From the IMG/VR virus record IMGVR_UViG_3300027770_000025, positions 62,001-126,000 of that record: a DNA stretch of 64,000 nucleotides; one strand, written 5' to 3'. Both the position numbers and the translations under genes were made by a program. Shown here one piece after another: positions 12,280-28,986 of the stretch; the first letter of the stretch is position 1, and every line of letters starts with the position of its first letter. The notes under the pieces are model-generated. The model was given only the letters and a program-made list of their open reading frames with translations. It was not told the DNA's origin and searched no databases.

Positions 12280-12417
12280 CTAAAACTCGAAACTTGCGGT
12301 CCCGACGTAGTTGCCTACGATAACATTAAAAATTGAAATTAGGATTCCGCCGAATGCGATTATCCCTAGACCGATAGCCCAAACTTTAAAAGTGATTTCT
12401 ACTGCTGATGATTTCAT
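12280..12417 (-). CDS. 45-aa single-TM early peptide
   Basis: Manual translation MKSSAVEITFKVWAIGLGIIAFGGILISIFNVIVGNYVGTASFEF; own promoter and terminator. Confidence 0.65.
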   Translation of the reverse strand: MKSSAVEITFKVWAIGLGIIAFGGILISIFNVIVGNYVGTASFEF

Positions 12418-12492
12418 ATGAATTAGTTTTAATTGGTTATAAAGTAAATGTAAGACATCTAGTCCAGGATAAAAAATATTACTGGTTCTTTT

Positions 12493-12669
12493 TTAGAAAA
12501 TAAATTTTATCAACTCCCAGCACCCTATGATCACAGCTAAAGGAACGATGCCTATCTCTAGACCTCTGGCCTTTGAGTAGTTAAAATGAAGAGGGTTTGC
12601 TATCAGTGCCTTTAATACACTGTATAGTAGGAAGAACGGAAATACGATAATCTGAAGTAGTTCTCTCAT
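12493..12669 (-). CDS. 58-aa membrane peptide
   Basis: Manual translation MRELLQIIVFPFFLLY...; own early promoter. Confidence 0.6.
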   Translation of the reverse strand: MRELLQIIVFPFFLLYSVLKALIANPLHFNYSKARGLEIGIVPLAVIIGCWELIKFIF

Positions 12670-12777
12670 GTGTATATGTTTTAATTGGTTAGCACAAATA
12701 TAAAGGGTTATATCGGGATAAAAAAATAAAGCTCTTGGTATTCTGTGGCCGGCGGTTCCTGATGCTGCTCACGTTGT

Positions 12778-12951
12778 CTACTCGTTGCTATCTAGCTGCT
12801 CAATTAGCATTTCTGCAAGGTGACCTATCCATCTGCCTATCTGCCAACATCCAATAATTACAAGAAGTGAATCTGGCAATATGATGATTAAGGATAGCGT
12901 TACACATATCGCAATTATCATGATGGGAATAGTGTGTTTAATAAGCTTCAT
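12778..12951 (-). CDS. Small membrane protein (start revised)
   Basis: MKLIKHTIPIMIIAICVTL... Confidence 0.55.
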   Translation of the reverse strand: MKLIKHTIPIMIIAICVTLSLIIILPDSLLVIIGCWQIGRWIGHLAEMLIEQLDSNE

Positions 12952-13270
12952 AGTTAATGGATTTAAGTTGTTATTTATATAAGGGTTGTTGTCAATTGTT
13001 TCTGTCCGCGGAAAATGCTGCGAAGTTGCTGCGAAGTTGCTGCGAAGTTGCTGTAAAGAGTGGGAACGTTGACAACGGTCTACCCAGCTGCATGCTATTG
13101 CTTTTCCCATCTTTTTCCGGAATTTTTAGTGGGGGTTTTACAGCTGTGCTCTATGGTCGTACCGAGGGCAACGTTCCCGCAGCAGCTTAGAGTTTTTGCT
13201 TGGCGAATTCTTTGACCAATAAAAAAGGCCTCGTGTGAGGCCCCTTCGGTGATTTCGTGAAATGTGTGGG

Positions 13271-13444
13271 TTAGTACCCGTTTCCATCTTCCCACTCTTC
13301 ATCTTGAAGCGGGTGGTGGAACGCTGGTCCTTGTGGGAAGCCATTACCAGAAGCCTGGTGTGCGATTGCGGGTTGGGGTTTGTTGCCCATTTGGTTTGCC
13401 CAAAAAGATTTTGGAGTTACTGGGGAAAATTGGTGGTTTTTCAT
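13271..13444 (-). CDS. Small early protein (start revised)
   Basis: MKNHQFSP...; early promoter upstream, terminator downstream. Confidence 0.6.
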   Translation of the reverse strand: MKNHQFSPVTPKSFWANQMGNKPQPAIAHQASGNGFPQGPAFHHPLQDEEWEDGNGY

Positions 13445-13503
13445 ATGACGATTTATTAGTTGGTTACATAGCAAATATAAGAATTCCAGTTCAGGATAAA
13501 AAA

Positions 13504-13722
13504 TTAAAACCTATTTTTTTCATTTAGTCCGCTAACCTTTTTGCCCTCTGGCAGGATCGTCGATAGCATAAACATTGCTGCCAACATAAAGCTTAAGAAA
13601 CAAAATGCCATCTCGTTGAGAACGCCGGCAAAGTGAATGTAGGTTTGGATATCCCCTGTTGCAGTGAACACCCCGATTAGCATGCAAGCTAAGAATCCTA
13701 AAACGTTTAATAGATTTTTCAT
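13504..13722 (-). CDS. Small two-TM early protein
   Basis: Two hydrophobic segments; promoter upstream. Confidence 0.65.
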   Translation of the reverse strand: MKNLLNVLGFLACMLIGVFTATGDIQTYIHFAGVLNEMAFCFLSFMLAAMFMLSTILPEGKKVSGLNEKNRF

Positions 13723-13797
13723 GTGTATATGGTTTAGTTGGTTATAGCATAAAAGTAAACAATCCCGCCGCGGGAAAAAAATAAACCTGAGATTTTT

Positions 13798-13959
13798 TTA
13801 AATCTCAGGTTCAAGTAAATCCCAGGCAGTTTCTCCGGTCGGGATATTGTTTTTAAGAATTGTGTAATTCGGGTCCATGCCGGAATCCATGACGTCATTA
13901 AGCAACTCATCAAGGGTTGAAAATGATTTTGTGTAGTAATCGCAGTCTAATGTGTACAT
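13798..13959 (-). CDS. 53-aa acidic early protein
   Basis: Manual translation MYTLDCDYYTKSFSTLDELL...; promoter at ~13983. Confidence 0.65.
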   Translation of the reverse strand: MYTLDCDYYTKSFSTLDELLNDVMDSGMDPNYTILKNNIPTGETAWDLLEPEI

Positions 13960-14575
13960 AAGAAAGTGTTTAATTGGTTATCTAAATATAAGACATCTGA
14001 TTGGGATAAAAAAATAAATTTTAATAAAATTATAAATAAACTTTTCTGGAGTAATACAGGTTAAGAATCTAAAACCTGTTAACAGTCGCTGTACCGCTGT
14101 CAACGTTCCTTAGACTTTTTCCAGATGCTTCCAGATGCTTCCAGATTGTTCCAGGATAATAATCCGGATACATGCGCTGGAACGTTGACAGCGGTTTAAA
14201 TACGGAAAAGAATCTGAAAACAGTAGGTGGTTTCCCAGAGAATTCCTGGATTTTTCCAAGCATCTATGGATTTATGGAGTGGGAACGTTGACGACGGATA
14301 TAGACATGGTACAAATTCAAAAAACCCCTGAGGATTTTCCCTGTTTTTCCGCGGATACACAGGCTATAGATTGTGGTCGACGTTCCCGCTCATTTCTATC
14401 AGGATCTTTCGTGGTTTAATATAGGATGTTCATGTGGTTTAACGTATGGGTTTCTGATGTATCCATGAAATATCCAGATGTTTTCAGATGTATCCAGGGT
14501 GTATTCAGATGTTTTCAGTCGCGGGAACGTTGACGACGGTTTAAGCAACAGACAGCAACAGACAGCAACAGTAGT

Positions 14576-14719
14576 TTATTGCTTGTTCTTTCTAATGATG
14601 GGGGTGATTATTCGGTCTAGTATTTCGAAAGATACTATCACCATTCCTAATATAGCTGCTGCTATCATGCTTATAAAGCCCACTGCTAACACCAAAGGTA
14701 ATCTTATTAGTCTTTTCAT
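14576..14719 (-). CDS. 47-aa single-TM peptide
   Basis: Manual translation MKRLIRLPLVLAVGFISMIAAAILGMVIVSF... Confidence 0.45.
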   Translation of the reverse strand: MKRLIRLPLVLAVGFISMIAAAILGMVIVSFEILDRIITPIIRKNKQ

Positions 14720-14885
14720 ATCTTCTTTTTCTTTTTCTTATACGAAGCTTACATGGCTTCTTCTTATCTACCATCTCCGTGGCCGGCTTTCCTGAGTTGA
14801 GATTCGGAAAATATTTAGCAGGTTCTATAACTTCTTTCTCACATGAAATAAAAAAGAGTGGTATAAGTAACAGTAATTTATTCAT
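14592..14885 (-). CDS. Possible small lipoprotein
   Basis: MNKLLLLIPLFFISC signal/lipobox-like; overlaps the previous ORF. Confidence 0.4.
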   Translation of the reverse strand: MNKLLLLIPLFFISCEKEVIEPAKYFPNLNSGKPATEMVDKKKPCKLRIRKRKRRYEKTNKITFGVSSGLYKHDSSSYIRNGDSIFRNTRPNNHPHH

Positions 14886-15100
14886 ATATGTATTTATCAG
14901 ATTTATTAAAACTCCTAAAACCCTCCGCGTGCGGGAGTATGTTAGCACCATACTATGTGCAGGAAGTTATGCATTTTTCCACGCATCTTCGGGACGGGAA
15001 CGTTGACAACGGTCTTCGGATTCGTACTAGATAAAAACTCGGGACAACAAAAAAGCAGACCGAAGTCTGCTTTTTATTAAATTACTTTAAAATAATGTTA

Positions 15101-15427
15101 CTAAGAATATTCATCACACTCCCTTAAAAATTCAATATCCATTTCATCAATATCACCTATTGATATTTCATCATATTCTCTGTTTATAAATTTCTTTCCC
15201 TCTATTAAACACTCTGTTATAATCTCCACATTTAAAATAGCTCCTATTAAACTCTCAAACCCCATTCCTGAATCTAGACTTCCGTCTGATAAAGCCTTCT
15301 CTGCCAACTCTCTAATATCGGGCATAGAGTCGCCAGTAATCTTAATGGTTGGGTAAGCTCCTCTTCCGCCTCCCCATAAATTTCCTAGTAAAAATCCTTC
15401 GGCGTGATAACTAATTTTCTTTTCCAT
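15101..15427 (-). CDS. Early hypothetical protein
   Basis: ORF with own promoter and GCAGAC/GTCTGC terminator. Confidence 0.75.
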   Translation of the reverse strand: MEKKISYHAEGFLLGNLWGGGRGAYPTIKITGDSMPDIRELAEKALSDGSLDSGMGFESLIGAILNVEIITECLIEGKKFINREYDEISIGDIDEMDIEFLRECDEYS

Positions 15428-15760
15428 GTTTGTTTAGCTTTAGTTGGTTATGATGCAAATATAAGAAACTAGATAGAGATAAAAAAATAAAATGTGAAAA
15501 TAATTTAATTCTTAATGACCACACAAACAGATGTTGGAGATCGGGGAACGTTGACAACGGTTTTACCCCAACTCTATCTGGAAACTCCCTTCTTCTTTTT
15601 TCTCCAGATAATCCTCTTTTTCCCAGAGTGTTTTCCACCCGGTCTAGGAGCGGGAACGTTGACAACGGTTTTACCCTGAGATGTGGATTACTTTAGTAAA
15701 AATTTGTCCACAAAAAAAGCAGACCGAAGTCTGCTTTCTTATTGACTATGAATCAACAGC

Positions 15761-16264
15761 CTATCCTTGTTTAAAGAATAGGTCGTCGACTTTGATTTGT
15801 GTGCTAGCTAAAACATGTTGAAGACAATCAGGACCGAAGCCGGTGTTAATTGATTCTGGGTGTGTTAGCGGTAATGCACACCGGAAGCATTTTCCTTCGT
15901 GCAATAATGATACCTTCTTATCCCTTAGGATCTGTGGATTCTCTAGCGCATTCATAATGAATTTCATAACCTGACCAAGTTGACTTTCGCTTGGAACGTT
16001 GCGGTGTAGTTTGCAAATCATACTGTCTTTGAAAATTGTACCTGCAAAAACGTAACCAGTTTGGCGATCGCCTAATAGGCTAACGAACACGTAGAAAATT
16101 GGAAGCTTAATCTTACGGTCGTTCTTGTCCGTGAGTTGCTTAACCTTTACGGTCATGTGAGTTTCTTTTTCTGTGTTGCGGAACGTGAGTACTGCACGAC
16201 CTGCAAAGAAAAGAGTTGGTAATGCGAGCGGGTTAACATTTGAACGGATAATTGGCTTTCTCAT
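15761..16264 (-). CDS. DUF6011-like Zn-finger protein
   Basis: CFRCALPLTHPESINTGFGPDC. Confidence 0.75.
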   Translation of the reverse strand: MRKPIIRSNVNPLALPTLFFAGRAVLTFRNTEKETHMTVKVKQLTDKNDRKIKLPIFYVFVSLLGDRQTGYVFAGTIFKDSMICKLHRNVPSESQLGQVMKFIMNALENPQILRDKKVSLLHEGKCFRCALPLTHPESINTGFGPDCLQHVLASTQIKVDDLFFKQG

Positions 16265-16693
16265 GGTGTATGTGTTTTAATTGGTTAATGCAAATATAAG
16301 ACCTTAACCCGGGATAAAAAAATAAAGCCCAGACTAATCCGGGTTTATTTTTAATCGAATATTTACACCTCAAGTATAAAAAATTGCTTTTTTTTAAACT
16401 TTATAAATCTGCTGGGAATCGTTCAGACCACGGGAACGCTGGTGGTGTTCCCATGCCCCCTTCTTCTTTTTCGGTTTGTATTTGTTGGCATCCTCATTGT
16501 TCAGAAACCACCTTATCCTCTTTCCATCTCACTGTACCGTGCTTATCCTCTATCACCTCATGCTCGTGGTGGGATTCCGTTTTAAAGATTTGTTTATAAT
16601 CTTTAATTTCATAAAGAGATTTTCTGTCTATTATTTTCATTTGATTTCTTTTAAATCCCTCGCGAGCGTGAGTATGTTAGTGACATACTATGT

Positions 16694-16963
16694 TTAGAAT
16701 AAACCTAGTTGGCGTATGCTTCTCTCGCCGAACTCCCTGTTTATCTGTTCTATTGTTTGATGACTCCTTGGATCTTCATCTTCAGAATACCAAACTTCAA
16801 ATGTGGTTTCGCCATTTCCGTATAGACTGCGCCCAGCACCACCACCTACAACGGAAGCGCTGGTTCCGTTTGGTAATTCCAGAAATGCAGATTTACCTCC
16901 TGGAACTACCTGGTGTGGTTTAAACACCAGGTCTTCAAAGGTGAAGATTTTTAGTTCTTGCAT
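16694..16963 (-). CDS. Early hypothetical protein
   Basis: SVVGGG..LYGNGETTFEV. Confidence 0.7.
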   Translation of the reverse strand: MQELKIFTFEDLVFKPHQVVPGGKSAFLELPNGTSASVVGGGAGRSLYGNGETTFEVWYSEDEDPRSHQTIEQINREFGERSIRQLGLF

Positions 16964-17121
16964 AGTATCAATCTTACGTTTTCGTTCTCGATAACATCAA
17001 AGGCTTTTCTTTCCTCTGTGATTTGGGTGTTAATCTTTTTAAGAGCTTCAATCATATTTCGGAATGCTGCTTGCATTTCCAAAAATTCTTTTCTGTTTTC
17101 ATCATTTGATTTCTCTGACAT
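16951..17121 (-). CDS. 56-aa early coiled-coil-like peptide
   Basis: Manual translation MSEKSNDENRKEFLEMQ...; promoter at ~17148. Confidence 0.55.
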   Translation of the reverse strand: MSEKSNDENRKEFLEMQAAFRNMIEALKKINTQITEERKAFDVIENENVRLILCKN

Positions 17122-17197
17122 GGCGTTTGTTTTAATTGGTTACAAAGCAAATATAAGAAACATGATTGAGATAAAAAAATAAAAGAGAGGATATTTT

Positions 17198-17386
17198 CTA
17201 AGCTCTTTCTATATCTAAATCCCCATATCTGTCACGGACTGGTATCCATCCGTAAATCATTCCAACCTCATCTACCCAATCATAAAGACCCATTCTGTCA
17301 TCCTCATGGGCTTTGTTGTTCCACTCGGCTAAGTCCTTTCTGACTAAGCTCCACCACTCATCTTTTGTTGCTGCTGTTACTGTCAT
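17198..17386 (-). CDS. Early hypothetical protein
   Basis: ORF track; follows 17390..17611. Confidence 0.6.
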   Translation of the reverse strand: MTVTAATKDEWWSLVRKDLAEWNNKAHEDDRMGLYDWVDEVGMIYGWIPVRDRYGDLDIERA

Positions 17387-17389
17387 AAT

Positions 17390-17611
17390 TTAGTCCTCCT
17401 CTTCGTTTAGTGGGGCAAACATTTTCCTGCCCATGTTAATAAAGTTATCGTACTCTCTTTCTCCCATTGAAGTCTTTAACTCTTCAACAGCTTCTTTGTG
17501 CTCTTTGATTTTTAATCTGGCTTTGTCCCAGTCGCCAGATGCTGCTGATTCTTTAATTTCCCAGTTGGTATCTAATACCTTTCTGAAGATTGCTGATTGT
17601 TCGTCGGTCAT
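17390..17611 (-). CDS. Early hypothetical protein, paralogue of 34538..34750
   Basis: Shared MTxxQ..F and L..SMG..EY......GR pattern. Confidence 0.7.
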   Translation of the reverse strand: MTDEQSAIFRKVLDTNWEIKESAASGDWDKARLKIKEHKEAVEELKTSMGEREYDNFINMGRKMFAPLNEEED

Positions 17612-17673
17612 GATGTGGTTTATTATTTGGTTAATACAAAGATAAGAAATTGGATCGGGATAAAAAAATAAAA

Positions 17674-17973
17674 CTATAAATCATTTAGAATTTCAAATGA
17701 ACTAATTCGTCTCGAACCAACACCAGTTGCTAGTATTGATTGAATCTCCTTGTCCAAGTCCTCCACCTTTTTAAAATTCCGCGCACCGATAGGGAGGGAA
17801 CGTTGGAGTTGCATGTTGGATATACTGAATCCCGTTCCGCTGGATTGCCAACCACCGTAGTAGTTGTAAGAGAGTGTGTTGTCCTCACGAAGAACAACTG
17901 ATAAAGTTTTTGAGTTTCCCTGTGGTCCGTAAGTCGGATCAAATAGACGGTAAATAATAAGTAGTTTTTTCAT
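17674..17973 (-). CDS. Early hypothetical protein
   Basis: Own promoter. Confidence 0.7.
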   Translation of the reverse strand: MKKLLIIYRLFDPTYGPQGNSKTLSVVLREDNTLSYNYYGGWQSSGTGFSISNMQLQRSLPIGARNFKKVEDLDKEIQSILATGVGSRRISSFEILNDL

Positions 17974-18055
17974 GGTTGGTTATATTTAATTGGTTAATGC
18001 AAATATAAGATTCCCTGTTGGGATAAAAAAATAAAACTGAATAATTTAACTTACC

Positions 18056-18244
18056 CTACCCTCGTCGTTTGATTATTAGTTTTACCTCAGCAACTAATTC
18101 TTTTGATTCTGTCTTAACCGTTAACGGATTCGCTCCGGGACGATGTGTCTTAAAGAATTTAACAATTGCGGGTACGTTTAGCATACCGCCATTAATTAAT
18201 TCTATAATTTCTGCTCTAATTTCTGTGGTTGTCATTGCGTTCAT
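18056..18244 (-). CDS. Early hypothetical protein (start revised)
   Basis: Own promoter at ~18263. Confidence 0.6.
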   Translation of the reverse strand: MNAMTTTEIRAEIIELINGGMLNVPAIVKFFKTHRPGANPLTVKTESKELVAEVKLIIKRRG

Positions 18245-18349
18245 ATTTGTCTTATTAATACTCAAATATAAGATAATAAATCGGAGTAAAAAAATAAATA
18301 CAGATTATTACTGCATGGTGTTTTCTGATGTAGCAGATAGTTCGAAACG

Positions 18350-18777
18350 TTGTCAACGTTCCTGCGCCGCAACCTTGTTTGTCTTATGGGAATTGATATA
18401 TAGATTAATAAAAAATAAAAAAACTAATGAAAAATTTTAATTCTTTCGAAGATTTCAGTAACCAAAAAATAAACGAGGCAGCGGGCGTAGCTCCTTTTTA
18501 TGATAGCGTAAGCCAAATGAATGCTATATTAGCAAGTGATGATATTGCGGGTAAAATGGAAATGATGTTCATTGACAGTATGACCTATGCAGAGGATCTC
18601 ACATGGATTCTTAAAAGTAAAGATCGTCCCAGATTTATTTTAAAGGTAACTTTAATAGCTGAGGGCGGAGGATATGGTGCTAAAAAATATACTGTAGGTA
18701 AAGTAGTAAAAACTATTGCAACACCTTAATTGTATTGTCAACGTTCCTGCGCCGCAACCTTGTTTGTCTTATGGGAA
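18350..18777. mobile_element. Gene cassette bounded by a perfect 43-bp direct repeat
   Basis: ttgtcaacgttcctgcgccgcaaccttgtttgtcttatgggaa at 18350-18392 and 18735-18777. Confidence 0.6.
18427..18729 (+). CDS. CTS-like-tagged late protein inserted in the early region
   Basis: MKNFNSFEDF..INE; GATATATA at 18395; opposite strand to neighbours. Confidence 0.75.
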   Translation: MKNFNSFEDFSNQKINEAAGVAPFYDSVSQMNAILASDDIAGKMEMMFIDSMTYAEDLTWILKSKDRPRFILKVTLIAEGGGYGAKKYTVGKVVKTIATP

Positions 18778-18856
18778 ACCTTGGAGCACAAAAAAAGAGA
18801 CCGAAGTCCCTTTCTCTGTGGGTAACCAAACCCATATCAAACACACATGATAATTT

Positions 18857-19054
18857 TTAATCCTCTATTTCGAATTGGTCTTCTTCGGGAATAACGGAAA
18901 GGGTTCTTCCACTATCCCATTTAACAATGATCTGACCTATTCCGTCTACTTTAACTACTGTACCCATAGCTCCCGGTTCGATTGGTTCAATATCATCCAT
19001 AAGAATCATTTTAATTCTTTTTCCTTCGATGTTTTTGCTGGTCAGGTGTTTCAT
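18857..19054 (-). CDS. DUF4314-like protein
   Basis: MDD..PIEPGAMGTVVKVDGIGQIIVKWDSGRTLSVIPEED. Confidence 0.75.
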   Translation of the reverse strand: MKHLTSKNIEGKRIKMILMDDIEPIEPGAMGTVVKVDGIGQIIVKWDSGRTLSVIPEEDQFEIED

Positions 19055-19121
19055 TGTCTTTTTCTTTTATTGGTTAATACAAAGATAACGTTTATATTCG
19101 GGATAAAAAAATAAAATCCGA

Positions 19122-19517
19122 TTATTCCCAATCATCATCTTCCTCTTCCTCTTCTGCGTAGAAGAAACCCTGAGCTTCGCAGGACTCCGGGTTCGGTAAG
19201 CTATTATACTGAGCTACCACATCGTCCTCTAACTCATGAACAAACTTCGGATAGATTACTCCGGGAGTGTTGTCCCCGCCTGGATTGTTCCTGAATACTA
19301 AATCAATTCCTGCACCTCGGTCTTCAGGTAAACCATTTAGCTCGCATAGGAGATCATAAAAATCCTTTCCACCAAACTCTCCGTAACCTTCATAATCAGG
19401 TTCGGTAAATACCCGTCCGTCCGGTGCAATCATATGCACTGTGAATGTTGGACGAGTTGAACAGTTGTTTGCGATTGACTCATCAGTATCGCACGTTTTC
19501 CAGCTAAAGAATCCCAT
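19122..19517 (-). CDS. Early conserved phage protein
   Basis: MGFFSW...YEGYGEFGGKDFY. Confidence 0.75.
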   Translation of the reverse strand: MGFFSWKTCDTDESIANNCSTRPTFTVHMIAPDGRVFTEPDYEGYGEFGGKDFYDLLCELNGLPEDRGAGIDLVFRNNPGGDNTPGVIYPKFVHELEDDVVAQYNSLPNPESCEAQGFFYAEEEEEDDDWE

Positions 19518-19752
19518 AGTGTTTTAGTTTTAATTGGTTATGGAGTAAAAGTAAGGTATCAGGTCGGGATAAAAAAATAAAAACTGAAAAAATACTCCGC
19601 CGGAGAAAGTAATAAAAACAGATGCTTCTGCTGGAGAAAACAGTATGCAGCCGCGGGAACGTTGACAGCGTTCTTCGGATTCGCAGCTGTGGAAAACCTA
19701 CGGCAACAAAAAAGGCAGACCTAAGCCTGCCTTTCAAAAGATTTTAAATCTT

Positions 19753-20061
19753 TTATTCGTCTAATTCGTTTAGTGCTCCTGCAATTTCATTTACAGCCAG
19801 ATCTGTAGAAAGTGATGAATGTCCGCCAATGTGCCATTCTATTAGTTCATTCTCATCCAATACCCTGTATTCCTTCCAATCATAAACTGTAAATACCTCA
19901 CCCTTCTCAGTCTCCATGACCCATTCGAAGTTTACCTTGTCCTTGCCATCATTCGTTTCAGAAACTGGAAGACCTAATATTTTTCGAAGGTCTGATACTG
20001 ATGCATTGAATACATCCCCATGGAAGCTTGTCCCACTTGGTGACTTTGATGGTTTTTTCAT
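19753..20061 (-). CDS. Early conserved phage protein (start revised)
   Basis: DKVNFEW...FTVYDWKEY...WHIGG. Confidence 0.75.
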   Translation of the reverse strand: MKKPSKSPSGTSFHGDVFNASVSDLRKILGLPVSETNDGKDKVNFEWVMETEKGEVFTVYDWKEYRVLDENELIEWHIGGHSSLSTDLAVNEIAGALNELDE

Positions 20062-20315
20062 AATTGTATAAGTTAGTTGGTTATGATGCAAATATAAGAT
20101 TCCTGGTTGGGATAAAAAAATAAAATGCTAAAATAGTTTTATTTTTCTTTAAGATGTTGAAGCTGTAGATAAAGATGTTACCCACATATAAAAAGATGTA
20201 GAAGTCGCGGGAACGTTGACAGCGTTCTTTGGATTCGCAGCTGTCGAAAACCTATGGCAACAAAAAAGGCCAAACCTAAGTTTGACCTCTTTAACCAATC
20301 AACCAACTTAACCAA

Positions 20316-20615
20316 TTAATATTTTGGCGGTGTAAAGAACACTATAGTTACTCCGCCTTCTCTAAATCCATCAGATACCATTACGCCATCCAACTTACCT
20401 TTATCTTCTCTGTTAATGTTATACCATTTGGAAATATAGCCAACTACGTCTGAATCTGCAAATCCTATTGGCTCTGGTCCACACATAGAACCCACTGTAT
20501 ATCCTAATTCTTTCAGTCTTCTCTCAGCGGAATTGAATGCGCTAAACGTGCCCGCGGGCGGAAAGGTTTCGGTGTGAAGTATTTCTCTTCCTAAATACGT
20601 TTCTCCTTTTTTCAT
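20316..20615 (-). CDS. Early hypothetical protein (start revised)
   Basis: GYTVGSMC..PIG...KW...LDG...FREG. Confidence 0.7.
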   Translation of the reverse strand: MKKGETYLGREILHTETFPPAGTFSAFNSAERRLKELGYTVGSMCGPEPIGFADSDVVGYISKWYNINREDKGKLDGVMVSDGFREGGVTIVFFTPPKY

Positions 20616-20831
20616 GATTGTTTGTTTTAGTTGGTTATAAAGCAAATATAAGATATAGGTTCGGGGTAAAAAAATAAAATACTAAATACCCTTCGCGGGC
20701 GTGAGTATCTTAGCACCATACTATGTGCAGGAGGTTACGGATTTTTCCACGCATCTTCGGGGCGGGAACGTTGACAGCGTTCTTCGGATGCTGCTTGGAT
20801 TAAAAATTAGATGTGGTGAGAAAAATAAATA

Positions 20832-21458
20832 TTATAAATTATTAATGATATCAATAAATATCTTTTTGGTCTCTTCTTTACCTATCTTTTCTTCTATGGA
20901 TTTGATAAAATTTATTACAATAGTCTGTTTGTAAATTTCCTGTTCGTAATCCTCCCATCTCTTAGCCTTTCCATCAGGTTTAGTATCCATAAACACCGTA
21001 GGTGCTTTTCCTGTGCATTTAGTTACAAGAGTCTCAACTTCTTTAATAATCCTGTCTACTTCAGTTTTATTTGTAATCACTATCTTTATATTAGGTAACT
21101 CTGATTGAAATTTATCATAGTCAAAATTTTTAGGAACTCTTACAGATACATGAGTAACACCGCCGCCTCTTCCGGTAAAATCTTTAGAGCCAATTCTAAT
21201 TCTAAGAACATTTTCTGAATCAATAGAAGATAAGTTCTTATTATCCTTTTCTCTATCGTATCTAAAATTATAAAAATCACTAGGATTAGTTATTATAAGT
21301 TTATCAAACGAACTTTCATTATCAGATGATATACTTGGATCGTCTTCTTTTACTTTAACATACCCATCAATAGTTGAATTAACATTAAATTTTAATTCAC
21401 TATATGGTAATTGGTCTTCGTTAATTTTTTCGTAGATAAAATCTTTAAATGTTTTCAT
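20832..21458 (-). CDS. CTS-like-tagged late protein inserted in the early region
   Basis: MKTFKDFIYE (very close to T4 IPIII MKTYQEFIAE); GATATATA upstream; flanked by 49-bp direct repeats. Confidence 0.75.
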   Translation of the reverse strand: MKTFKDFIYEKINEDQLPYSELKFNVNSTIDGYVKVKEDDPSISSDNESSFDKLIITNPSDFYNFRYDREKDNKNLSSIDSENVLRIRIGSKDFTGRGGGVTHVSVRVPKNFDYDKFQSELPNIKIVITNKTEVDRIIKEVETLVTKCTGKAPTVFMDTKPDGKAKRWEDYEQEIYKQTIVINFIKSIEEKIGKEETKKIFIDIINNL

Positions 21459-21603
21459 TTCTATTGTTATTTATATATTTATATATCTTTAGTTTGAGCG
21501 GGAACGTTGACAGCGTTCTTCGAATGCTACTTGGATTAAAACTTAGTCCAACAAAAAAGCCTCTTCCGAAGAAGAGGCTCTTGACCAATTAACCAACTAC
21601 CAA

Positions 21604-21891
21604 TTATAACATTGCTCTCACTTTTGCGAAGTACTTATCAATGTCATTTGCGAACTTAATTGCTCTTGCCTTTGTTTTAGCGTAAGCAAAGAACTCGCAG
21701 AACTCACTATCGAAGTCTATTCCTTTGCAGTTAATTTTTTCTTTGACAAAATCTTCAAAGTCATATGCGCTATCAAACTCTTTAACAGTCATCGCTCTTT
21801 TAGCGTTTCCTGAGATTGACCAATCTTTGAAGCCATCGAGTTTATAGACTTCAAGACCTAATTCTAATTTTAATGCTGTTTCTGATGGCAT
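21604..21891 (-). CDS. Early hypothetical protein
   Basis: AACCAAC leader and terminator. Confidence 0.7.
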   Translation of the reverse strand: MPSETALKLELGLEVYKLDGFKDWSISGNAKRAMTVKEFDSAYDFEDFVKEKINCKGIDFDSEFCEFFAYAKTKARAIKFANDIDKYFAKVRAML

Positions 21892-22094
21892 GTGTGATTG
21901 GGTTTAGTTGGTTGTTAAAACATTTTAATTTTTAATTTTTGTCGAACAGATTCAAAATCTGCACCAGTGACTTCATTCTTACAATCAGAGACTAAATCAC
22001 ATAGTTCATTAAAATCTTTAACTCCTGATTGTTTTGCTAACTTTAGTAACTCTTTGAATCCTTCTGTCATAATTATTTGGGTTGGGTTTAGTTA

Positions 22095-22307
22095 TTAAAG
22101 TTTAACAATTTTTGAATCGGTAACCTGAATGCAACAGATGTTAAGACGTTTAATATCTCTTTTTAAATTATCTATAGATAATTTACCTATTACAAAAGAC
22201 TTTGCCCCCTTTTTATTCTCACACTCTACGTGAAAAATCATTGGTGGGTCTAAACCTCCTATCACCCAATCTGGATCTGTAACTACTACACAAAATAGAT
22301 GTTTCAT
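22095..22307 (-). CDS. Early hypothetical protein
   Basis: Own promoter. Confidence 0.6.
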   Translation of the reverse strand: MKHLFCVVVTDPDWVIGGLDPPMIFHVECENKKGAKSFVIGKLSIDNLKRDIKRLNICCIQVTDSKIVKL

Positions 22308-22369
22308 ATTAATTTGTTTATTTGGTTATATTACAAAGATAAGAAACTACATCGTGATAAAAAAATAAA

Positions 22370-22810
22370 TCAGATCATTTTTGATAATCTGTTTACCCTT
22401 TTAAATACTGAGAATTGCTCCTCTGTAATTCCAAGATCCTTTAAGTAGCTGTCGATTATAGCCAAATCTTTCTGTGGCATTTTTTCGATAACTGCGACGG
22501 CCTGAAGGAACGTTGATCCTGTTCCCATTATGGTAGCTATTGATGTTGATGTCTTTACAGACAGGGCACCGGGAATGTTGATTTTAATTTCACCGGTGTC
22601 ATATTTATAAAAACCCCGCTCTTTGTTCTTTGCATGAACAACGGATAAATTAAATATACGGGCAACGTGACCAATGTGCTTAGATGTGGTACGACTATAT
22701 CTGCCGTGCTCTATTAACTTATCATCTTCGATATGTGCTACGATTGTATCATAACTAATGATTTCATTTCCTCTGCGGAATAAGTTCTCTCTTAATTTTA
22801 ATGTTTCCAT
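22370..22810 (-). CDS. Early conserved phage protein
   Basis: SYDTIVA...YSRTTSKH motif. Confidence 0.7.
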   Translation of the reverse strand: METLKLRENLFRRGNEIISYDTIVAHIEDDKLIEHGRYSRTTSKHIGHVARIFNLSVVHAKNKERGFYKYDTGEIKINIPGALSVKTSTSIATIMGTGSTFLQAVAVIEKMPQKDLAIIDSYLKDLGITEEQFSVFKRVNRLSKMI

Positions 22811-23085
22811 GGTTGGTTTGATTGGTTAATGTAAAGATAAGAATTCAGATTGGGATAAAAAAATAAAAACCTAAAATAATTCTATTTATTTTTCAGCTGT
22901 TAAATCAGACCAAACAGCTGTTGCAGCTTGCGGGAACGTTGACACCGGTTCCGCTCCAGTCTACAGTAAGGTTTGGGAAAGTTTGGAGCATAAAAAAACT
23001 CTCCTTGGGGTAGGAGAGTTTAGTAATCCATTTCTTGGTGGCGGCACCTTTACACGACCGGGATTTCCACTTGTGAGGATCTTTG

Positions 23086-23334
23086 TTAATCAACCCAAAC
23101 TTCTTTTGTTACCGAAATGGAACGCCATGCGCTTTTTTCCAAATCAAAGAAGGTTGTTACTGAACTGGGAGCCGAACCTCCTTTTGGGTGACCTGATACT
23201 GGGATGCGAGATAAATCTCTTGTTCCCATTGCTATTCTAAGTTCTCCACCAACTTTGTGGAAATAGAATTTAACTACGCCTTGACGTAATCTGTCTTTAA
23301 GTTGTTCGTGTGTGATTTTTTTAAGTGATGACAT
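23086..23334 (-). CDS. WYL_2/DUF2693-like SH3-fold protein
   Basis: VKFYFHKVGGELRIAMGT...FFDLEKSAWRS. Confidence 0.75.
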   Translation of the reverse strand: MSSLKKITHEQLKDRLRQGVVKFYFHKVGGELRIAMGTRDLSRIPVSGHPKGGSAPSSVTTFFDLEKSAWRSISVTKEVWVD

Positions 23335-23395
23335 ATGGTTTGTTTTAATTGGTTAATACAAAGATAAGGTATTTATTCGGGATAAAAAAATGTTT

Positions 23396-23845
23396 TTATT
23401 TTTTCTTTGTTATTTCAATTTCTTTTTTTATAACCATCAAGCCAATAAAATCTTCAAAATTATTTTTAATATTAAGTTCTTTTAATATCTTAGAGGAAAA
23501 TTCTTTTGATTCTCCAACAGAAAAAAATAAAGTTTCATCTGTCTCATGAAAAATTGTAATTGGTATTTCGCATCCAAGTTTTCCTAAGTTTTCTTTCCTG
23601 TGCCATTCCTCCTCCTTAATAATTTCTAATGTTTGGATTTCGTCTGTCATTTCTCCTGTTGGTTTAGGATATTGAAACTTACGCGGGGAAGTTATAAAAT
23701 TTTCAATAAAAGAATATGCACTTTCTTTTTCTAAAGGCTTCTGTGAAATTATTAAAAATTTACGAACAGAGTATTTTTCATAAGGTAGATTCCAATTCGT
23801 GATTGTTTCTAATTTAACTACAGTACCAAAAATCTTGTCTTTCAT
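23396..23845 (-). CDS. Early hypothetical protein
   Basis: Own promoter. Confidence 0.65.
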   Translation of the reverse strand: MKDKIFGTVVKLETITNWNLPYEKYSVRKFLIISQKPLEKESAYSFIENFITSPRKFQYPKPTGEMTDEIQTLEIIKEEEWHRKENLGKLGCEIPITIFHETDETLFFSVGESKEFSSKILKELNIKNNFEDFIGLMVIKKEIEITKKK

Positions 23846-24073
23846 TTTTATAGTGTTTAATTGGTTAATGCAAAGATAAGATATTGAACCGGGATAAAAA
23901 AATATTTCTAAAACTTTTTCTCCATCGGGAATTCTGCTGGAGAAACTGGTATCCGAATCCGGGGAACGTTGACAGCGGTTCTACTCTGTGCATATGGTTT
24001 TGCATTTAAGATTTTATGCCCACAAAAAAACCAGACCTAATCAGATCTGGTTCGCATTCGGAATTGGTAAATG

Positions 24074-24268
24074 CTATTTAATAGTTTTCCAACCTATGAT
24101 TTTAATATCCTTTTCTCTTACCCCAATCCATAAGTCAGACTTATTACTCTTACCGTTAATCTTAACCGCTCTCATAGAACTAGAGTAGATAACAACAGTA
24201 TCTTTTGGTACAACTACACCGCTTACCTTAGAGCGTAGTTCTTTTTTAAGTATGACTGCTTGTTCCAT
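24074..24268 (-). CDS. Small early protein (start revised)
   Basis: MEQAVILKKE... Confidence 0.55.
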   Translation of the reverse strand: MEQAVILKKELRSKVSGVVVPKDTVVIYSSSMRAVKINGKSNKSDLWIGVREKDIKIIGWKTIK

Positions 24269-24458
24269 ACCATAAATATAACAATTATATCTACGAAATA
24301 AAAATTTTACTAAGCATTTTTTTGTTAAAGTTTTTAGCCTACGCACGAGGTCCACGCTCCCGCACGTGCTTAGTATGTTAGCATCATACTATGTTTAAAA
24401 GGGCCTACAAAAAAGGCCTACCCTAAGGCAGACCTAATTTACGGAAATGAAGTTTATC

Positions 24459-25553
24459 TTAGAAAGGACTTGGTACGAAGTTAGTCATATCAAAATCCTT
24501 TGTCATCATACGTGATGCTTCTACTTGAAGACGACGACGATCGTAATCAGCTATTCTGAAACCGTTGTCGTGGCTAGCGAAGTGTGTTACCCCGTTAATT
24601 AAATCCCAAACGGATGTACCGGTTTTAGCACCTTTCTTTTGACCGGTGGTAAATGTAATGGTGTCGATGTTTGCCGCATGAAATCTAGCACGTGTAGTGT
24701 GCAATGGCACCCAAGCTTCAAGTTCTTTATTGTCAGCATCAGAGAATGCTTTGAGCGAGTCGTGTGCACTTTCTAATTCGAATAGTGAAGCACGTGTGTT
24801 CATAGCTAATCTTAATCTGTTCTCGAACTCTAGTGGGCGGAAACCGCGGTCGGCTAAAAGATTTAATTGTGCCCAGAATGTTTCCATTGAGCGTCCGTCC
24901 ATTTGACCTAACGATAATGACTCTTCAAATGTTTTACCCATTAACCCGTTTGCACAAACTAATCGATGTAAGAATGGACTTACCATAAAGCCTCCGATAG
25001 GACTGTTGGTGAACGAGATACCTCCGTAAAATTCTTCGTCGGCTAAACCACTAATACCCCAGACATTCTTAGGTGATGATGTGTTTATAACCACGCCACC
25101 ATCATTGTTGACCGAGAAATCGTTTACCTCCAGACCATACTTATTAATGATGCTGGATGAGGTGTCGATGAACGTTTGATTTGAAATTAAATCACGTGGG
25201 TCCTTTTGGACGTTAATAATTTCCCTAGTATCGGGGTTAACCACTAGTGATAACGTTGTGCTACCCTTAGCCTGCACCGCCACCTTTAACCTGTTGATAA
25301 GTTGTTGACGTGCTTTGTCACCGAATGATGTGGTAAACGTTTTGTCAAATCCGACGGGTAAGCCAACCACTTTACAGATACCTTTAAAGGCATCGCGATT
25401 AATTTTAATTTGATGATCCTCCAACTTCAGAGTGGTGTCGTTGATGATTTCAATATCCTTGATGCTGACTTCTTTTCGGATAGGAGTTTTGTTAACTGCT
25501 ATCTTCGCTTTGTCATCGAAGGCTTGTTGTGATAATGTTTCAAATTTTGGCAT
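24459..25553 (-). CDS. DUF932-like protein
   Basis: FTNS...LHRLVCANGL and SVWDLINGVTHFASH motifs. Confidence 0.6.
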   Translation of the reverse strand: MPKFETLSQQAFDDKAKIAVNKTPIRKEVSIKDIEIINDTTLKLEDHQIKINRDAFKGICKVVGLPVGFDKTFTTSFGDKARQQLINRLKVAVQAKGSTTLSLVVNPDTREIINVQKDPRDLISNQTFIDTSSSIINKYGLEVNDFSVNNDGGVVINTSSPKNVWGISGLADEEFYGGISFTNSPIGGFMVSPFLHRLVCANGLMGKTFEESLSLGQMDGRSMETFWAQLNLLADRGFRPLEFENRLRLAMNTRASLFELESAHDSLKAFSDADNKELEAWVPLHTTRARFHAANIDTITFTTGQKKGAKTGTSVWDLINGVTHFASHDNGFRIADYDRRRLQVEASRMMTKDFDMTNFVPSPF

Positions 25554-25626
25554 ATGGCTTTTATTTTTATTTGGTTTCTACAAAGATAAGAATTATGTAC
25601 GGGATAAAAAAATAAAAAGACGGGTT

Positions 25627-26634
25627 TTATAACCCGTCCTCCTCTTCCTCTTTAGCAAAACCAAAGAGAGTGTCAAATGCGTTTCCTTCGCTTTCGATTA
25701 GAGTACGCTCGTGGCTTAAAGCCTCTCTGGCATTCTCATCGTTGCTGAAACGTTTTAAATCATACTCAACATCACCCGTTGCAGATAGAGAATAGAACAT
25801 TCGTTTGTTAACAGGACCACGTCTGTTCTTGTTAAACATCATATACTGGCTGCCTGTTGCTTGATCGTAGCGTAACTCAAGCATACCAGTGGTATTATGC
25901 TTAAGCTTATTAGAACCGACGAAAACGCCTCCTTTTGTAACCTGTTGGATAGCAATAAAGGTTGTGTGGGTTTTAGTATCGTTTCCTGCAAGGTTGTGAG
26001 AGATCATTAGGTCGATCAGCCATTTTTCAGAACCGGTAGAGGTTAGTTTTAGTACCTCCTTAATATCTTCTTGTACCTCGGCAAAAGAGTCAATTAGTAC
26101 TACGTCGTAACCAGGTTTTAAAGCACTCTCAATTACAGTCTTAGGATTGCTGTCGCAATATTCTCCTGTAAATAGAATATCAACCTCGCCGAACTTGGGG
26201 TAACGCTGAACGTATCCATAAAGATCGATCCTTGTCATTTCAGCAGATATGAATAACACCCGATAGCCGTTGGCTGCCAGGTCGGAAAGAATATCTAACG
26301 ACACTGTGGATTTACCCACACCAGGATCGCCGATTAACATGAAGTTACAGGCCTTAGGTATTCCTCCATCGGAGGTGAACACCTGATCTACAGGTTTACC
26401 TGTCTTCATAGGAATGAATAGATCTGGTGAGAAGTATTGCCCACTCATGCGAACCAACTCCAGCGGCTTCTCGATAAATGCCGGTGGTGGTACATTGGCA
26501 CTTACTTGGGAAAGCGGAGGTAGTCCTTGATCTTGTCTTTTTCTAGCAGCAGCTAATCTGACTGCATCTGCGATACGAGCCTTAGCCTCATCGCTCATAG
26601 GTTTTCTTAGTCCTGTTGGTTCTTTGTGTGCCAT
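25627..26634 (-). CDS. RecA-superfamily ATPase, RadA/Sms-like (start revised)
   Basis: GDPGVGKST Walker A, FISAEM, VLIDS Walker B, QVTKGG.FVGSNKLKH, KNRRG. Confidence 0.75.
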   Translation of the reverse strand: MAHKEPTGLRKPMSDEAKARIADAVRLAAARKRQDQGLPPLSQVSANVPPPAFIEKPLELVRMSGQYFSPDLFIPMKTGKPVDQVFTSDGGIPKACNFMLIGDPGVGKSTVSLDILSDLAANGYRVLFISAEMTRIDLYGYVQRYPKFGEVDILFTGEYCDSNPKTVIESALKPGYDVVLIDSFAEVQEDIKEVLKLTSTGSEKWLIDLMISHNLAGNDTKTHTTFIAIQQVTKGGVFVGSNKLKHNTTGMLELRYDQATGSQYMMFNKNRRGPVNKRMFYSLSATGDVEYDLKRFSNDENAREALSHERTLIESEGNAFDTLFGFAKEEEEDGL

Positions 26635-26724
26635 CTTATATTGTTTTGATTGGTTATGGTGCAAGAATAATATTTCTAACCGGGGTAAAAAAATAAATTG
26701 GGGTTAATTTTAAAAATATTTTTA

Positions 26725-26934
26725 TTAACCCATTGTGGAGTAGTTAACCCTGTCCTTATACCTTCTAACCTTACCGTTACCTAGGTAAACATTTAGAACA
26801 CCCCCATTCCATAATGCCATCTGAACCGGTACCCCAACATCAATAGTAATAAAGTTATATTGGTCTTTGTAAACTTTAATGCGGTTGTATTCTATCCGAA
26901 CCACACCGCAATTAATAATTTTTGGATCCCACAT
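26725..26934 (-). CDS. Small early beta-rich protein
   Basis: Own promoter. Confidence 0.65.
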   Translation of the reverse strand: MWDPKIINCGVVRIEYNRIKVYKDQYNFITIDVGVPVQMALWNGGVLNVYLGNGKVRRYKDRVNYSTMG

Positions 26935-27026
26935 AGTTGATTGGTTTTATGTTTATGATGTAAATATAATAGATCCAACCGAGGTAAAAAAATATTTCAG
27001 ATATATAGTTCAATATAATTATTAAT

Positions 27027-27899
27027 ATGGATAAGATAAAAAGTTTTAAAGAGTTTACTCTTAACGAAAAAGGAAGTGCATTAGGTTTTCTAGGTGGTAT
27101 TCTAACTGGGAATATTGACATCTTCGATAAACCAGATCAATGGTCCGGTATAGGATCACCAATAACCGGCGATGGGGATCTGCCCAATTCTAACACCGTG
27201 GCATCTGGTCCAAATACCATAGGAGCATTAGCACCAGGTTCTTATACACCATCAGGAACTTATACAGCAACACCAGGTAATGATGACTTTGCTCTTTATA
27301 TGCAGCACCAACAAGGCATAGCAGGAGCAGCGGGTCTAGTTAAAGCACTTAACGGAACTGGTAATATGCATCCAGAAACAGTTAAAACTAAAAGCGGAAC
27401 TAGATACGCAAACCTAGTTAAGAACGTACCTTCTGATAGACCACAAGTTAAGAGAGATATTATAGCATCATTAGACAAAGGAGACCAAAAAACTGCAGCA
27501 GGACTATTCCTTAATATGTGGAAAGAGAAATGGTTTTCTAAGCAAAAGCAGGCTAAGACCGCTATCAACCTTCCCAAAAATGCTACGGTAAAAGATGCTA
27601 TCACTAAAGCATCTTCCAAATACAGTGTGCCCTTTGATTTTGCTATTACTGTTGCTATTATAGAATCAGGTTTAAATCCAGCTGCACACGGAGCAACATA
27701 CAAAGGTCTATATGCAATGAAACCCAGTAGCAACTACAGCGGATTGGTTACTCCTATGGGAAACAATTGGGCAGATCCCTATGTTAATGCAGAAAATGGT
27801 ATTAAGTTATTAAAAAATAACATTGCTCAATTCAAGAAAAGTTTAGGTAACGATTGGGCTTCTCTTAAAGTTGGAAGTTGGGCAAACAACTTAGCTTAA
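27027..27899 (+). CDS. CTS-like-tagged protein with C-terminal lytic transglycosylase (SLT-like) domain
   Basis: MDKIKSFKEFTLNE; ASSKYSVP..AIIESGLNPAA..GLYAM..DPYVNA. Confidence 0.75.
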   Translation: MDKIKSFKEFTLNEKGSALGFLGGILTGNIDIFDKPDQWSGIGSPITGDGDLPNSNTVASGPNTIGALAPGSYTPSGTYTATPGNDDFALYMQHQQGIAGAAGLVKALNGTGNMHPETVKTKSGTRYANLVKNVPSDRPQVKRDIIASLDKGDQKTAAGLFLNMWKEKWFSKQKQAKTAINLPKNATVKDAITKASSKYSVPFDFAITVAIIESGLNPAAHGATYKGLYAMKPSSNYSGLVTPMGNNWADPYVNAENGIKLLKNNIAQFKKSLGNDWASLKVGSWANNLA

Positions 27900-28046
27900 T
27901 TTTCCACGCAACCACAGAGCAGGAACGTTGACAACGGTTTCACCCACTACATCATACTTTTTCCCAATTATTAAACACAACAAAAAACCCAAGTCCTTTC
28001 GAACTTGGGTCCGGAGTCGAATAGTAAACTCCTTTAACCAACCAAC

Positions 28047-28475
28047 CTATTCAGCTTCTTTTATAAGTATATTTTCTAGTAATTTAGCTTGGCGTACATC
28101 TTCATGCGCATCTACACATAGCCACTCACCTGCTGCAGTGAAGACGTATCCATATTCTTCAACATCGCTATTAATGAAATCCTCCACACTGTCGTGGTCT
28201 CTAATCTCTAAATCCTCTCGACGGTCACGGTGATAAGCTACCACGATACCGTCTGCTGGTGAACCGAAATTATGAGTAACCCCTTCAGGTATTTCTACAT
28301 TTTTATTTAATGAAGAAATTGATCCTAATTTGATTAACGATTCAATTTTCTCTTGTGTTCGGAAATGATCTAATAAGATTCTGCCATTATTAGACGGGTA
28401 GCCGTCCCAGTGACAGTAAATTGAACGTACTTTTCCTGTTTGATCTTCGATTGCGATTCTTGAGCGTGTTGCCAT
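28047..28475 (-). CDS. Early conserved phage protein
   Basis: MATRSRIA...YCHWDGYP motif. Confidence 0.75.
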   Translation of the reverse strand: MATRSRIAIEDQTGKVRSIYCHWDGYPSNNGRILLDHFRTQEKIESLIKLGSISSLNKNVEIPEGVTHNFGSPADGIVVAYHRDRREDLEIRDHDSVEDFINSDVEEYGYVFTAAGEWLCVDAHEDVRQAKLLENILIKEAE

Positions 28476-28547
28476 AGTTATAATTGTTTTAGTTGGTTAG
28501 TGATGCAAATATAAGATACATGTTCGGGATAAAAAAATATTTTCTAA

Positions 28548-28922: not shown

Positions 28923-28986
28923 ATGGCTGAGGTTTGATTGGTTAACGTAAAGATAAGATACATGACCGGGATAAAAAAATAAATTC

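What the first reader, a model, noticed from the sequence alone, without database searches (positions are those of the whole stretch)
19652..21546. Two more repeat-bounded cassettes with slightly decayed repeats
19652-19716 versus 20206-20270 (62/65 identical) bracket gene 19753..20061. 20762-20810 versus 21498-21546 (46/49) bracket the AT-rich tagged late gene 20832..21458. In both pairs the similarity begins right at GCGGGAACGTTGAC, pointing to the element's left edge as the crossover or duplication boundary. Mismatch counts of 0, 3 and 3 give a rough insertion chronology.
Basis: seen in the sequence. Interest (0 to 1): 0.7.

Follow-up and report, generated by a model that had tools for sequence, protein, structure and literature searches.

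The report
Shuffled gene cassettes in jumbo phage
In a 349-kb freshwater phage genome, small single-gene units come and go between strains by recombination at short conserved control sequences between the genes; this resembles gene shuffling already described in T4-like phages, but adds a conserved 25-base box of unknown function.

Summary
Both repeat pairs are real: 62/65 and 46/49 identical. They are copies of a module that follows the genes of a 23-kb array of small single-gene units: intrinsic terminator, about 35-45 nt, then a core box (GGGAACGTTGAC on the + strand). The box occurs 22 times and only inside this array of the 348,582-bp metagenomic phage genome.

The genes between the repeats are unrelated, so these are cassettes and not tandem gene duplicates.

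Other lake samples carry natural alleles without them:
- One contig lacks the 208-aa gene, with the junction inside the 49-nt repeat.
- Two contigs lack the 102-aa gene, but that junction is in the promoter box, not at the box edge.
- Two contigs lack a third cassette, with the junction inside the core box.

The GGG edge of the box is therefore a recurrent breakpoint, but so are the promoter box and the 5' leader. No integrase, resolvase or HUH transposase was found. A RecA/UvsX-like gene is present.

The mismatch chronology fails. The first pair predates a strain split, and the core is the most conserved sequence in the array.

More distant relatives carry a 17-bp palindrome at the same position after their terminators.

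Best reading: PeSL-like recombination at shared regulatory modules. The function of the core box remains unknown.

The parts
12169..34938 (.). Array of small single-gene cassettes, mostly on the - strand, that holds all 22 copies of the core box
19652..19716 (+). Post-gene module copy after the 102-aa gene: core box, spacer and the A-run of the terminator
19708..19731 (-). Intrinsic terminator of the 102-aa gene (hairpin plus T-run)
19753..20061 (-). 102-aa gene. It belongs to a large viral family of unknown function (1101 hits). It is absent between the 99-aa and 131-aa genes in L122 and L123.
20062..20137 (-). Promoter and leader of the 102-aa gene (promoter box 20109-20120, a TAnnTTTG-type -7 box, an AACCAA leader). 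This is the crossover site of the natural 543-bp indel.
20206..20270 (+). Post-gene module copy after the 99-aa gene (62/65 identical to 19652-19716)
20316..20615 (-). 99-aa gene, with no detectable relation to the 102-aa gene
20675..20761 (-). Spacer shared with 14907-14996 (83% over 131 nt). It contains a second conserved 23-nt box at 20702-20724.
   Evidence: (D18)
20762..20810 (+). 49-nt repeat downstream of the 208-aa gene (core box plus the gene's own downstream flank)
20832..21458 (-). 208-aa AT-rich gene of unknown function. It is present or absent depending on the lake sample. Homologues (75-90% identity) sit in other neighbourhoods in related phages.
21459..21497 (-). Late-type promoter (GATATATAA and two TATAAATA) directly upstream of the 208-aa gene
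21498..21546 (+). 49-nt repeat upstream of the 208-aa gene (46/49). The allele lacking the gene keeps one chimeric copy, joining 20793 to 21530.
21553..21579 (-). Intrinsic terminator of the 95-aa gene (21604..21891)
18350..18777 (.). Third cassette: 43-nt perfect repeats (18350-18392 and 18735-18777) bracket the inverted 100-aa gene 18427..18729
14997..15663 (.). Cassette holding the 108-aa gene, bounded by box copies at 14997 and 15653. It is absent in L121 and L123, with the junction inside the core box.

Best explanation
The repeats are copies of a conserved intergenic module that separates single-gene cassettes in a highly variable region of a freshwater jumbo phage. From its promoter type the host is probably a member of the Bacteroidota. 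Read in the direction of the genes, each unit is: promoter box plus TAnnTTTG-type -7 box, AACCAA leader, gene, intrinsic terminator, about 35-45 nt of spacer, then the core box (GTCAACGTTCCCGC). Unrelated genes share these 17-65-nt modules, so homologous recombination between modules deletes, inserts and reorders cassettes. Each cassette keeps its own promoter and terminator. The phage's own RecA/UvsX-type machinery is the likely agent. This is how the PeSL cassettes of T4-like phages work. Shown here: the anatomy, the restriction of the box to the array, the natural alleles lacking a cassette, and junctions located in the repeats. Inferred: the recombination pathway, the direction of each event, and promoter and terminator activity. 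The core box itself is under strong constraint, is tied to terminators, and is a full palindrome in more distant relatives. My best guess, at about 0.4, is that it binds a phage protein that blocks or insulates read-through transcription between cassettes, in the manner of a stoperator. Its use as a crossover point would then be a by-product.
For: Repeat identities are. The box is over-represented and confined to the array. The enclosed genes are unrelated: BLASTP finds no alignment, and a profile built from 121 family members finds no paralogue in the window. L122 and L123 lack the 102-aa gene, with the switch of sequence type inside TTTTATTTTTTTATCCC. L121 and L123 lack the 108-aa cassette, with the switch inside the core box. 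A 333-nt contig from run X11 joins 20793 to 21530, skipping 736 nt, with 104 nt on the shorter side. Summed contig depth over the 208-aa gene is about 4.5 in X8 and X9 against 45-300 in the flanks, and equal to the flanks in X3. Contigs from other strains join cassettes in a different order, with joints in the post-gene module. Eight indels have ends at a promoter box, a leader or the core box. The 208-aa gene carries its downstream box with it in L152 and L155, where its neighbours differ. No tyrosine recombinase, serine recombinase or HUH transposase was found. A RecA-family ORF scores 53 bits. The box lies 34-48 nt after a terminator T-run in 13 of 22 copies here, and 26-46 nt after one in about 24 of 30 sites in relatives. 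Between strains the core mismatches at 1.4%, coding sequence at 3.4% and the flanks at 5.7-8.5%. PeSL features are taken from PMC2839356.
Against: The variants come from short metagenome contigs and Logan contigs. Summed contig depth is a poor measure of allele frequency. No circular intermediates, recombination rates or transcripts could be observed. The direction of each event (gain or loss) is unresolved: X11 and L156 show two different arrangements without the 208-aa gene. The function of the box is untested and no cognate DNA-binding protein was found (no HTH_3 or ParB_N hit). In this phage the box does not form a hairpin better than shuffled controls do (mean z -0.27).
Confidence: 0.7

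Rival explanations
1. The core box is a dedicated site for site-specific cassette recombination, like an integron attC site. Cassettes would be cut out and inserted at a fixed point at the GGG edge by a phage recombinase.
For: Four independent breakpoints fall directly after ...GTCAACGTTCCCGC. The box sits at the downstream end of each cassette and is a palindrome in relatives. The 208-aa gene travels with its downstream box.
Against: Pfam models find no tyrosine recombinase, serine recombinase or HUH enzyme in the genome. Other indels end in the promoter box or the leader, each sharing 17-23 nt of identity, as homology-driven exchange predicts. The third pair breaks at the opposite edge of the box. 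The cassettes carry their own promoters, unlike integron cassettes.
Confidence: 0.1
2. The repeats reflect only a shared regulatory function plus local gene conversion. They play no part in cassette gain or loss, and the indels are ordinary deletions.
For: The core is more conserved than coding sequence. Copies within one genome are as alike as the corresponding copies in another strain. Adjacent post-gene modules are also near-identical in L156. Median similarity of adjacent copies equals that of non-adjacent copies.
Against: The junctions of at least five independent indels lie inside shared modules. The same genes are found next to different neighbours, with joints in the post-gene module.
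Confidence: 0.12
3. A whole gene unit was duplicated in tandem and the coding parts then diverged. The 554-556-bp spacing of three successive boxes suggests this.
For: Box copies at 19656, 20210 and 20765 are 554 and 555 nt apart. The promoters and post-gene modules of neighbouring units are similar.
Against: BLASTP finds no alignment between the 102-aa and 99-aa proteins even at E <= 100. A 121-member profile of the 102-aa family scores only its own ORF in the window. Strains lacking just one unit exist.
Confidence: 0.04
4. The box is the end of a selfish miniature transposable element (MITE-like or REP/REPIN-like) that has spread through the array.
For: There are 22 copies in intergenic DNA. 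Two inverted doublets exist (13063/13177 and 14282/14386, about 105 nt apart). Five copies cluster in the gene-poor stretch 14040-14590.
Against: Only about 25 nt are shared by all copies and no target-site duplications are seen. There is no Y1 transposase. The spacing to terminators is fixed and the position is the same in relatives of 72-78% protein identity. Strong between-strain constraint fits a function for the phage.
Confidence: 0.04

Closest known systems
PeSL (promoter-early stem-loop) mobile regulatory cassettes of T4-type phages (Arbiol et al. 2010, PMC2839356; Comeau et al. 2014, PMC4122927)
   Same: Repeated promoter and terminator modules are concentrated in a variable region full of small genes of unknown function. 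Indels between close relatives end in the modules. Each gene keeps its own promoter and terminator. A phage recombinase is available.
   Different: The phage lineage is different and the promoter is of the Bacteroidota TAnnTTTG type, not sigma-70. Terminator and promoter are separate, about 100-150 nt apart, rather than interleaved. An extra, strongly conserved box is tied to the terminator. Mini-circles have not been shown.
Stoperators of Cluster A mycobacteriophages (PMC6550527, PMC9283540)
   Same: There are 20-30 short dispersed sites in intergenic DNA, mostly in one orientation relative to transcription, and the consensus is specific to each lineage and drifts between relatives.
   Different: Those phages are temperate and have a known repressor. 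Here no integrase or repressor was found. Binding and blocking of transcription are untested. The sites here are confined to one array and sit at a fixed distance after terminators.
Integron gene cassettes with attC sites
   Same: An array of single-gene cassettes, each ending in an imperfect palindrome, with cassette presence varying between strains.
   Different: There is no IntI-type recombinase. The cassettes have their own promoters. The RYYYAAC and GTTRRRY attC core sequences are not matched. Junctions also occur in promoters.
Morons of lambdoid phages
   Same: Self-contained units of promoter, gene and terminator inserted between other genes, often with deviating base composition (the 208-aa gene has 28% GC).
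   Different: Morons are isolated insertions without a shared flanking repeat family.

Membership tests
PeSL-type regulatory cassettes | A repeated intergenic motif that combines an early promoter with a terminator stem-loop | tested here: met
   A promoter box plus -7 box is repeated 19-24 times. Hairpins followed by T-runs fold at -8 to -17 kcal/mol. This rests on sequence only; activity was not tested, and the layout differs because the two elements are separate rather than interleaved.
PeSL-type regulatory cassettes | Motifs concentrated in variable regions rich in genes without known homologues | tested here: met
   All box copies and most promoter boxes lie in window 12-36 kb. Most genes there have no Pfam, PHROG or NCBIfam match.
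PeSL-type regulatory cassettes | Indels between close relatives have their ends in the motifs | tested here: met
PeSL-type regulatory cassettes | Circular cassette molecules carrying one chimeric motif | not testable with these tools
   Only assembled contigs were available. 'Goes back' joints are equally well explained by other gene orders.
PeSL-type regulatory cassettes | T4-type phage using sigma-70 consensus early promoters | tested here: not met
   A sigma-70 consensus scan found no excess (23 sites against 22.2 expected). The promoters are of the TAnnTTTG type. Relationship to T4-type phages was not tested.
Integron / attC | An IntI tyrosine recombinase | tested here: not met
   PF00589 gave no match in the 348-kb genome, while the control genomes were positive.
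Integron / attC | Promoterless cassettes ending in an attC site with the GTTRRRY core | tested here: not met
   Each cassette has its own promoter. The box reads GTTCCCG or GTTGACA, which does not fit the core (read directly from the sequence).
Stoperator system | About 20-30 asymmetric sites oriented with transcription | tested here: inconclusive
   There are 22 copies. Of the copies tied to a terminator, 11 of 14 share one orientation (my count). The relatives' version is nearly symmetric.
Stoperator system | A cognate repressor that binds the sites and stops elongation | not tested
   No candidate was found (no HTH_3 or ParB_N hit). Binding cannot be tested here.
REP/REPIN with RAYT | A Y1 (HUH) transposase and palindromic doublets | tested here: not met
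   PF01797 gave no match. Only two inverted doublets exist and their spacers are not conserved.

The most novel reading that the evidence does not exclude
The terminator-coupled box is GTCAACGTTCCCGC here and the 17-bp palindrome CACCGT-N5-ACGGTG in relatives. It could be the recognition site of an unidentified phage protein. That protein would either insulate neighbouring early cassettes by stopping read-through polymerase, which would make it a stoperator-like system in a jumbo phage where no integrase was found. Or it would actively promote cassette exchange, giving an integron-like system without a known integrase. Site and protein would co-evolve between lineages.
Probability: 0.3. Interest if true: 0.7.

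Novelty: new variant of a known kind. Interest (0 to 1): 0.5.

Why it matters
The result extends module-mediated gene shuffling, so far described in T4-like phages, to an uncultured family of 290-430-kb freshwater phages, and catches it happening within natural populations. It also defines two conserved non-coding boxes that are specific to the cassette array. The first is fixed in position relative to terminators and is more conserved than the genes around it, so it is a concrete target for working out how huge phages organise and regulate their fast-changing accessory genes.

Tried and rejected
- Rfam (E-value mode) over 11.5-36 kb gave only chance-level hits.
- Megablast against GenBank phages found nothing.
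- An exact-pattern scan of IMG/VR for the box gave only single-copy chance hits.
- No Pfam, PHROG or NCBIfam family matched the 95-, 99-, 102- or 208-aa proteins.
- The AlphaFold model of the 208-aa protein was too poor for fold search (pLDDT 46).
- The protein atlas gave only viral proteins labelled hypothetical.
- Sigma-70 reading of the TTGACA inside the box: read by eye, no conserved -10 element follows it, and the scan shows no excess of such promoters.
- Hairpin reading in this phage: folding energies are no better than with the arm shuffled.
- Antisense small RNA reading: I saw no upstream promoter, and the T-tracts on the + strand are weak.
- Short words such as CAGATG and TTTTCC are 8-13-fold enriched beside the box, but a few tandem repeats drive this.
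- The metatranscriptome run X19 gave only short, directionless contigs, so transcript ends could not be read.
- A literature search for this phage group or these motifs found nothing.

Full report
**Context.** The window is positions 62,001-126,000 of a single 348,582-bp contig. The contig comes from a freshwater lake metagenome (JGI 3300027770). Window positions 12-36 kb form a dense array of small genes, almost all on the - strand. Each gene is preceded by a repeated promoter-like module: TTTATTTTTTTATCCCG, about 8 nt, then TCTTATATTTGC, then an AACCAA-rich leader. This module occurs 19-24 times. Most genes are followed by a hairpin plus T-run. From my own knowledge, the TAnnTTTG element and the lack of a Shine-Dalgarno sequence are typical of Bacteroidota, so the host assignment is an inference. 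The phage encodes a sigma-70-family protein at 8285..9199 and a RecA/UvsX-like protein outside the window.

**Observation.** Both repeat pairs are as described: 62/65 and 46/49 identical, and identity ends abruptly just left of GCGGGAACGTTGAC. A third pair (18350-18392 and 18735-18777, 43/43) brackets the inverted gene 18427..18729, but it extends from the other edge of the box. GGAACGTTGAC matches 23 times in the window against 0.48 expected. I count 22 of these as box copies, and all of them lie inside the array; the rest of the genome holds only two 1-mismatch matches.

**Anatomy.** Read in the direction of the genes, a unit is: promoter, leader, gene, terminator, spacer, core box (...CCGTTGTCAACGTTCCCGC). 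The box lies 34-48 nt after a terminator T-run in 13 of 22 copies. Its distance to the next promoter box varies more (58-91 nt), and in some copies there is no promoter box nearby. The box therefore belongs to the downstream end of a cassette.

**The enclosed genes are unrelated.**
- BLASTP finds no alignment between the 102-aa and 99-aa proteins.
- A profile of 121 members of the 102-aa family hits only its own ORF in the window.

The 208-aa gene is AT-rich (28% GC) and has a different promoter type, GATATATAA/TATAAATA. That promoter type is shared with + strand genes at 40-64 kb.

**Natural variants.** Contigs from other samples differ from the window by whole cassettes.
- L122 and L123 lack the 102-aa gene. 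The alignment switches from the '99-to-102' spacer type to the '102-to-131' type inside the promoter box, so the indel runs from promoter box to promoter box (543 bp) and not from box edge to box edge.
- L121 and L123 lack the 108-aa cassette (about 14997-15653). There the switch lies inside the core box.
- For the 208-aa gene, a 333-nt contig of run X11 joins 20793 to 21530. It skips 736 nt and retains one chimeric 49-nt repeat. Summed contig depth over the gene is about 4.5 in X8 and X9 against 45-300 in the flanks, and equal to the flanks in X3. Depth from contigs is only suggestive.
- L156 is a more diverged strain with the same box. It has no 208-aa gene at this site, and its spacer differs from that of the X11 allele. 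At the 99-to-102 spacer it diverges from the window exactly after ...GTCAACGTTCCCGC.
- Further indels end in the promoter box or in a 23-nt shared leader.
- Contig joints place the 99-aa and 102-aa cassettes next to other neighbours.
- Homologues of the 208-aa gene (75-90% identity) sit among different neighbours in related phages. In L152 and L155 they keep a box 25-30 nt after the stop codon.

**Mechanism.** Junctions fall in whichever 17-65-nt module two cassettes share. This fits homology-driven exchange. No tyrosine recombinase, serine recombinase or HUH transposase was detected. This is the logic of PeSL-mediated modular shuffling in T4-type phages.

**Adjacency.** Adjacency matters for three pairs only: 3 of 27 adjacent pairs score high against 1 of 198 non-adjacent pairs (p = 0.006). 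The medians are the same, and the single best pair is non-adjacent (14997 and 20765). The 20765 copy is a mosaic: it resembles 14997 on one side of the box and 21501 on the other.

**Chronology.** The mismatch clock fails. The pair around the 102-aa gene is also present in L156, so it predates that strain split. Copies within one genome differ at 3-4 positions, while the corresponding copies in the two genomes differ at 2 and 6.

Between-strain mismatch rates:

| Region | Mismatch rate |
|---|---|
| Core box | 1.4% |
| Coding sequence | 3.4% |
| Promoters | 4.3% |
| Spacer on the terminator side | 5.7% |
| Flank on the GGG side | 8.5% |

The core is constrained or homogenised rather than decaying.

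**The box in relatives.** Eight related loci from phage contigs of 126-430 kb (array ATPase 72-78% identical) keep the promoter box but lack GGAACGTTGAC. Three of the records searched whole instead carry a cluster of CACCGT-YGNCR-ACGGTG, often extended to GAAACA...TGTTTC. A fourth record (G004) holds only a single site. The reversed-pattern control gave 0-1 hits. About 24 of 30 such sites lie 26-46 nt after a terminator T-run. The window's box aligns with this palindrome over about 21 nt and is an asymmetric derivative of it. In this phage its hairpin potential is no better than with shuffled arms (mean z -0.27), except in the copies of this finding (z about -2).

**Function of the box.** A conserved, lineage-specific, terminator-coupled, near-palindromic site suggests a protein-binding site. 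The nearest functional analogy is the stoperator. No binding protein was identified. The function remains an inference.

**Verdict.** The cassette reading is right, the 'left edge only' boundary is too narrow, and the chronology is unsupported. The system is a new variant of a known kind.

Noticed in passing
window 14934-14956, 16669-16691, 20702-20724, 24370-24392, 35349-35371, 35583-35605, 36750-36772; also L143, L144, L146, L148, L152, L155: A second conserved 23-nt box, ACATA(G/C)TATGnTnnTAA(C/G)ATACT, is often followed by a GC-rich CGCnCGCGAGGG stretch. This genome holds nine matches: eight inside the array region, seven of those on the gene strand and the eighth the near-palindromic site at 36750-36772 read on the other strand, plus one 2-mismatch match far outside (genome position 242,790); the reversed-pattern control gave 1 hit. 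In five of the array copies an ORF of at least 40 aa starts 13-104 nt downstream. The box is conserved across the whole phage family, and RNAalifold finds no consensus fold. It may be another promoter class.
   Followed up: partly
window 20288-20315, 21580-21603, 28020-28045, 29930-29955; L156 in several spacers: Directly after the stop codon of some cassettes, and before the terminator, there are two or three TTGGTT(AA) repeats. These are the reverse complement of the AACCAA leader motif found upstream of the genes (AACCAA occurs 40 times against 10 expected).
   Followed up: partly
window 13020-13060 and 14040-14590: A gene-poor stretch holds five box copies in both orientations plus short tandem repeats (three copies each of about 10-11-nt units). 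Two inverted box doublets lie about 105 nt apart (13063/13177 and 14282/14386).
   Followed up: no
window 34915-34955: One box copy is embedded in a terminator: on the gene strand CCGCGG...CCGCGG forms the stem around the box and is followed by seven T.
   Followed up: no
window 8285-9199 (+): A phage-encoded sigma-70-family factor with regions 1.2, 2, 3 and 4. Its target promoters are unknown.
   Followed up: partly
window 37476-50960 (+): A family of at least five paralogous genes shares conserved N-terminal regions and arrays of 63-nt (21-aa) repeats. One member has a weak LRR_4 match. Several of the + strand genes in this stretch are preceded by GATATATAA.
   Followed up: partly
window 21914-22304 and 23416-23890: The 70-aa plus 51-aa genes, and the 149-aa gene, are absent or replaced in L120, L121 and L122. 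L122 also has an extra 129-aa gene inserted at the promoter box near 22852, with a 69-nt promoter duplication.
   Followed up: partly
window 58689-58766 (-): A tRNA-Met gene (anticodon CAT).
   Followed up: no
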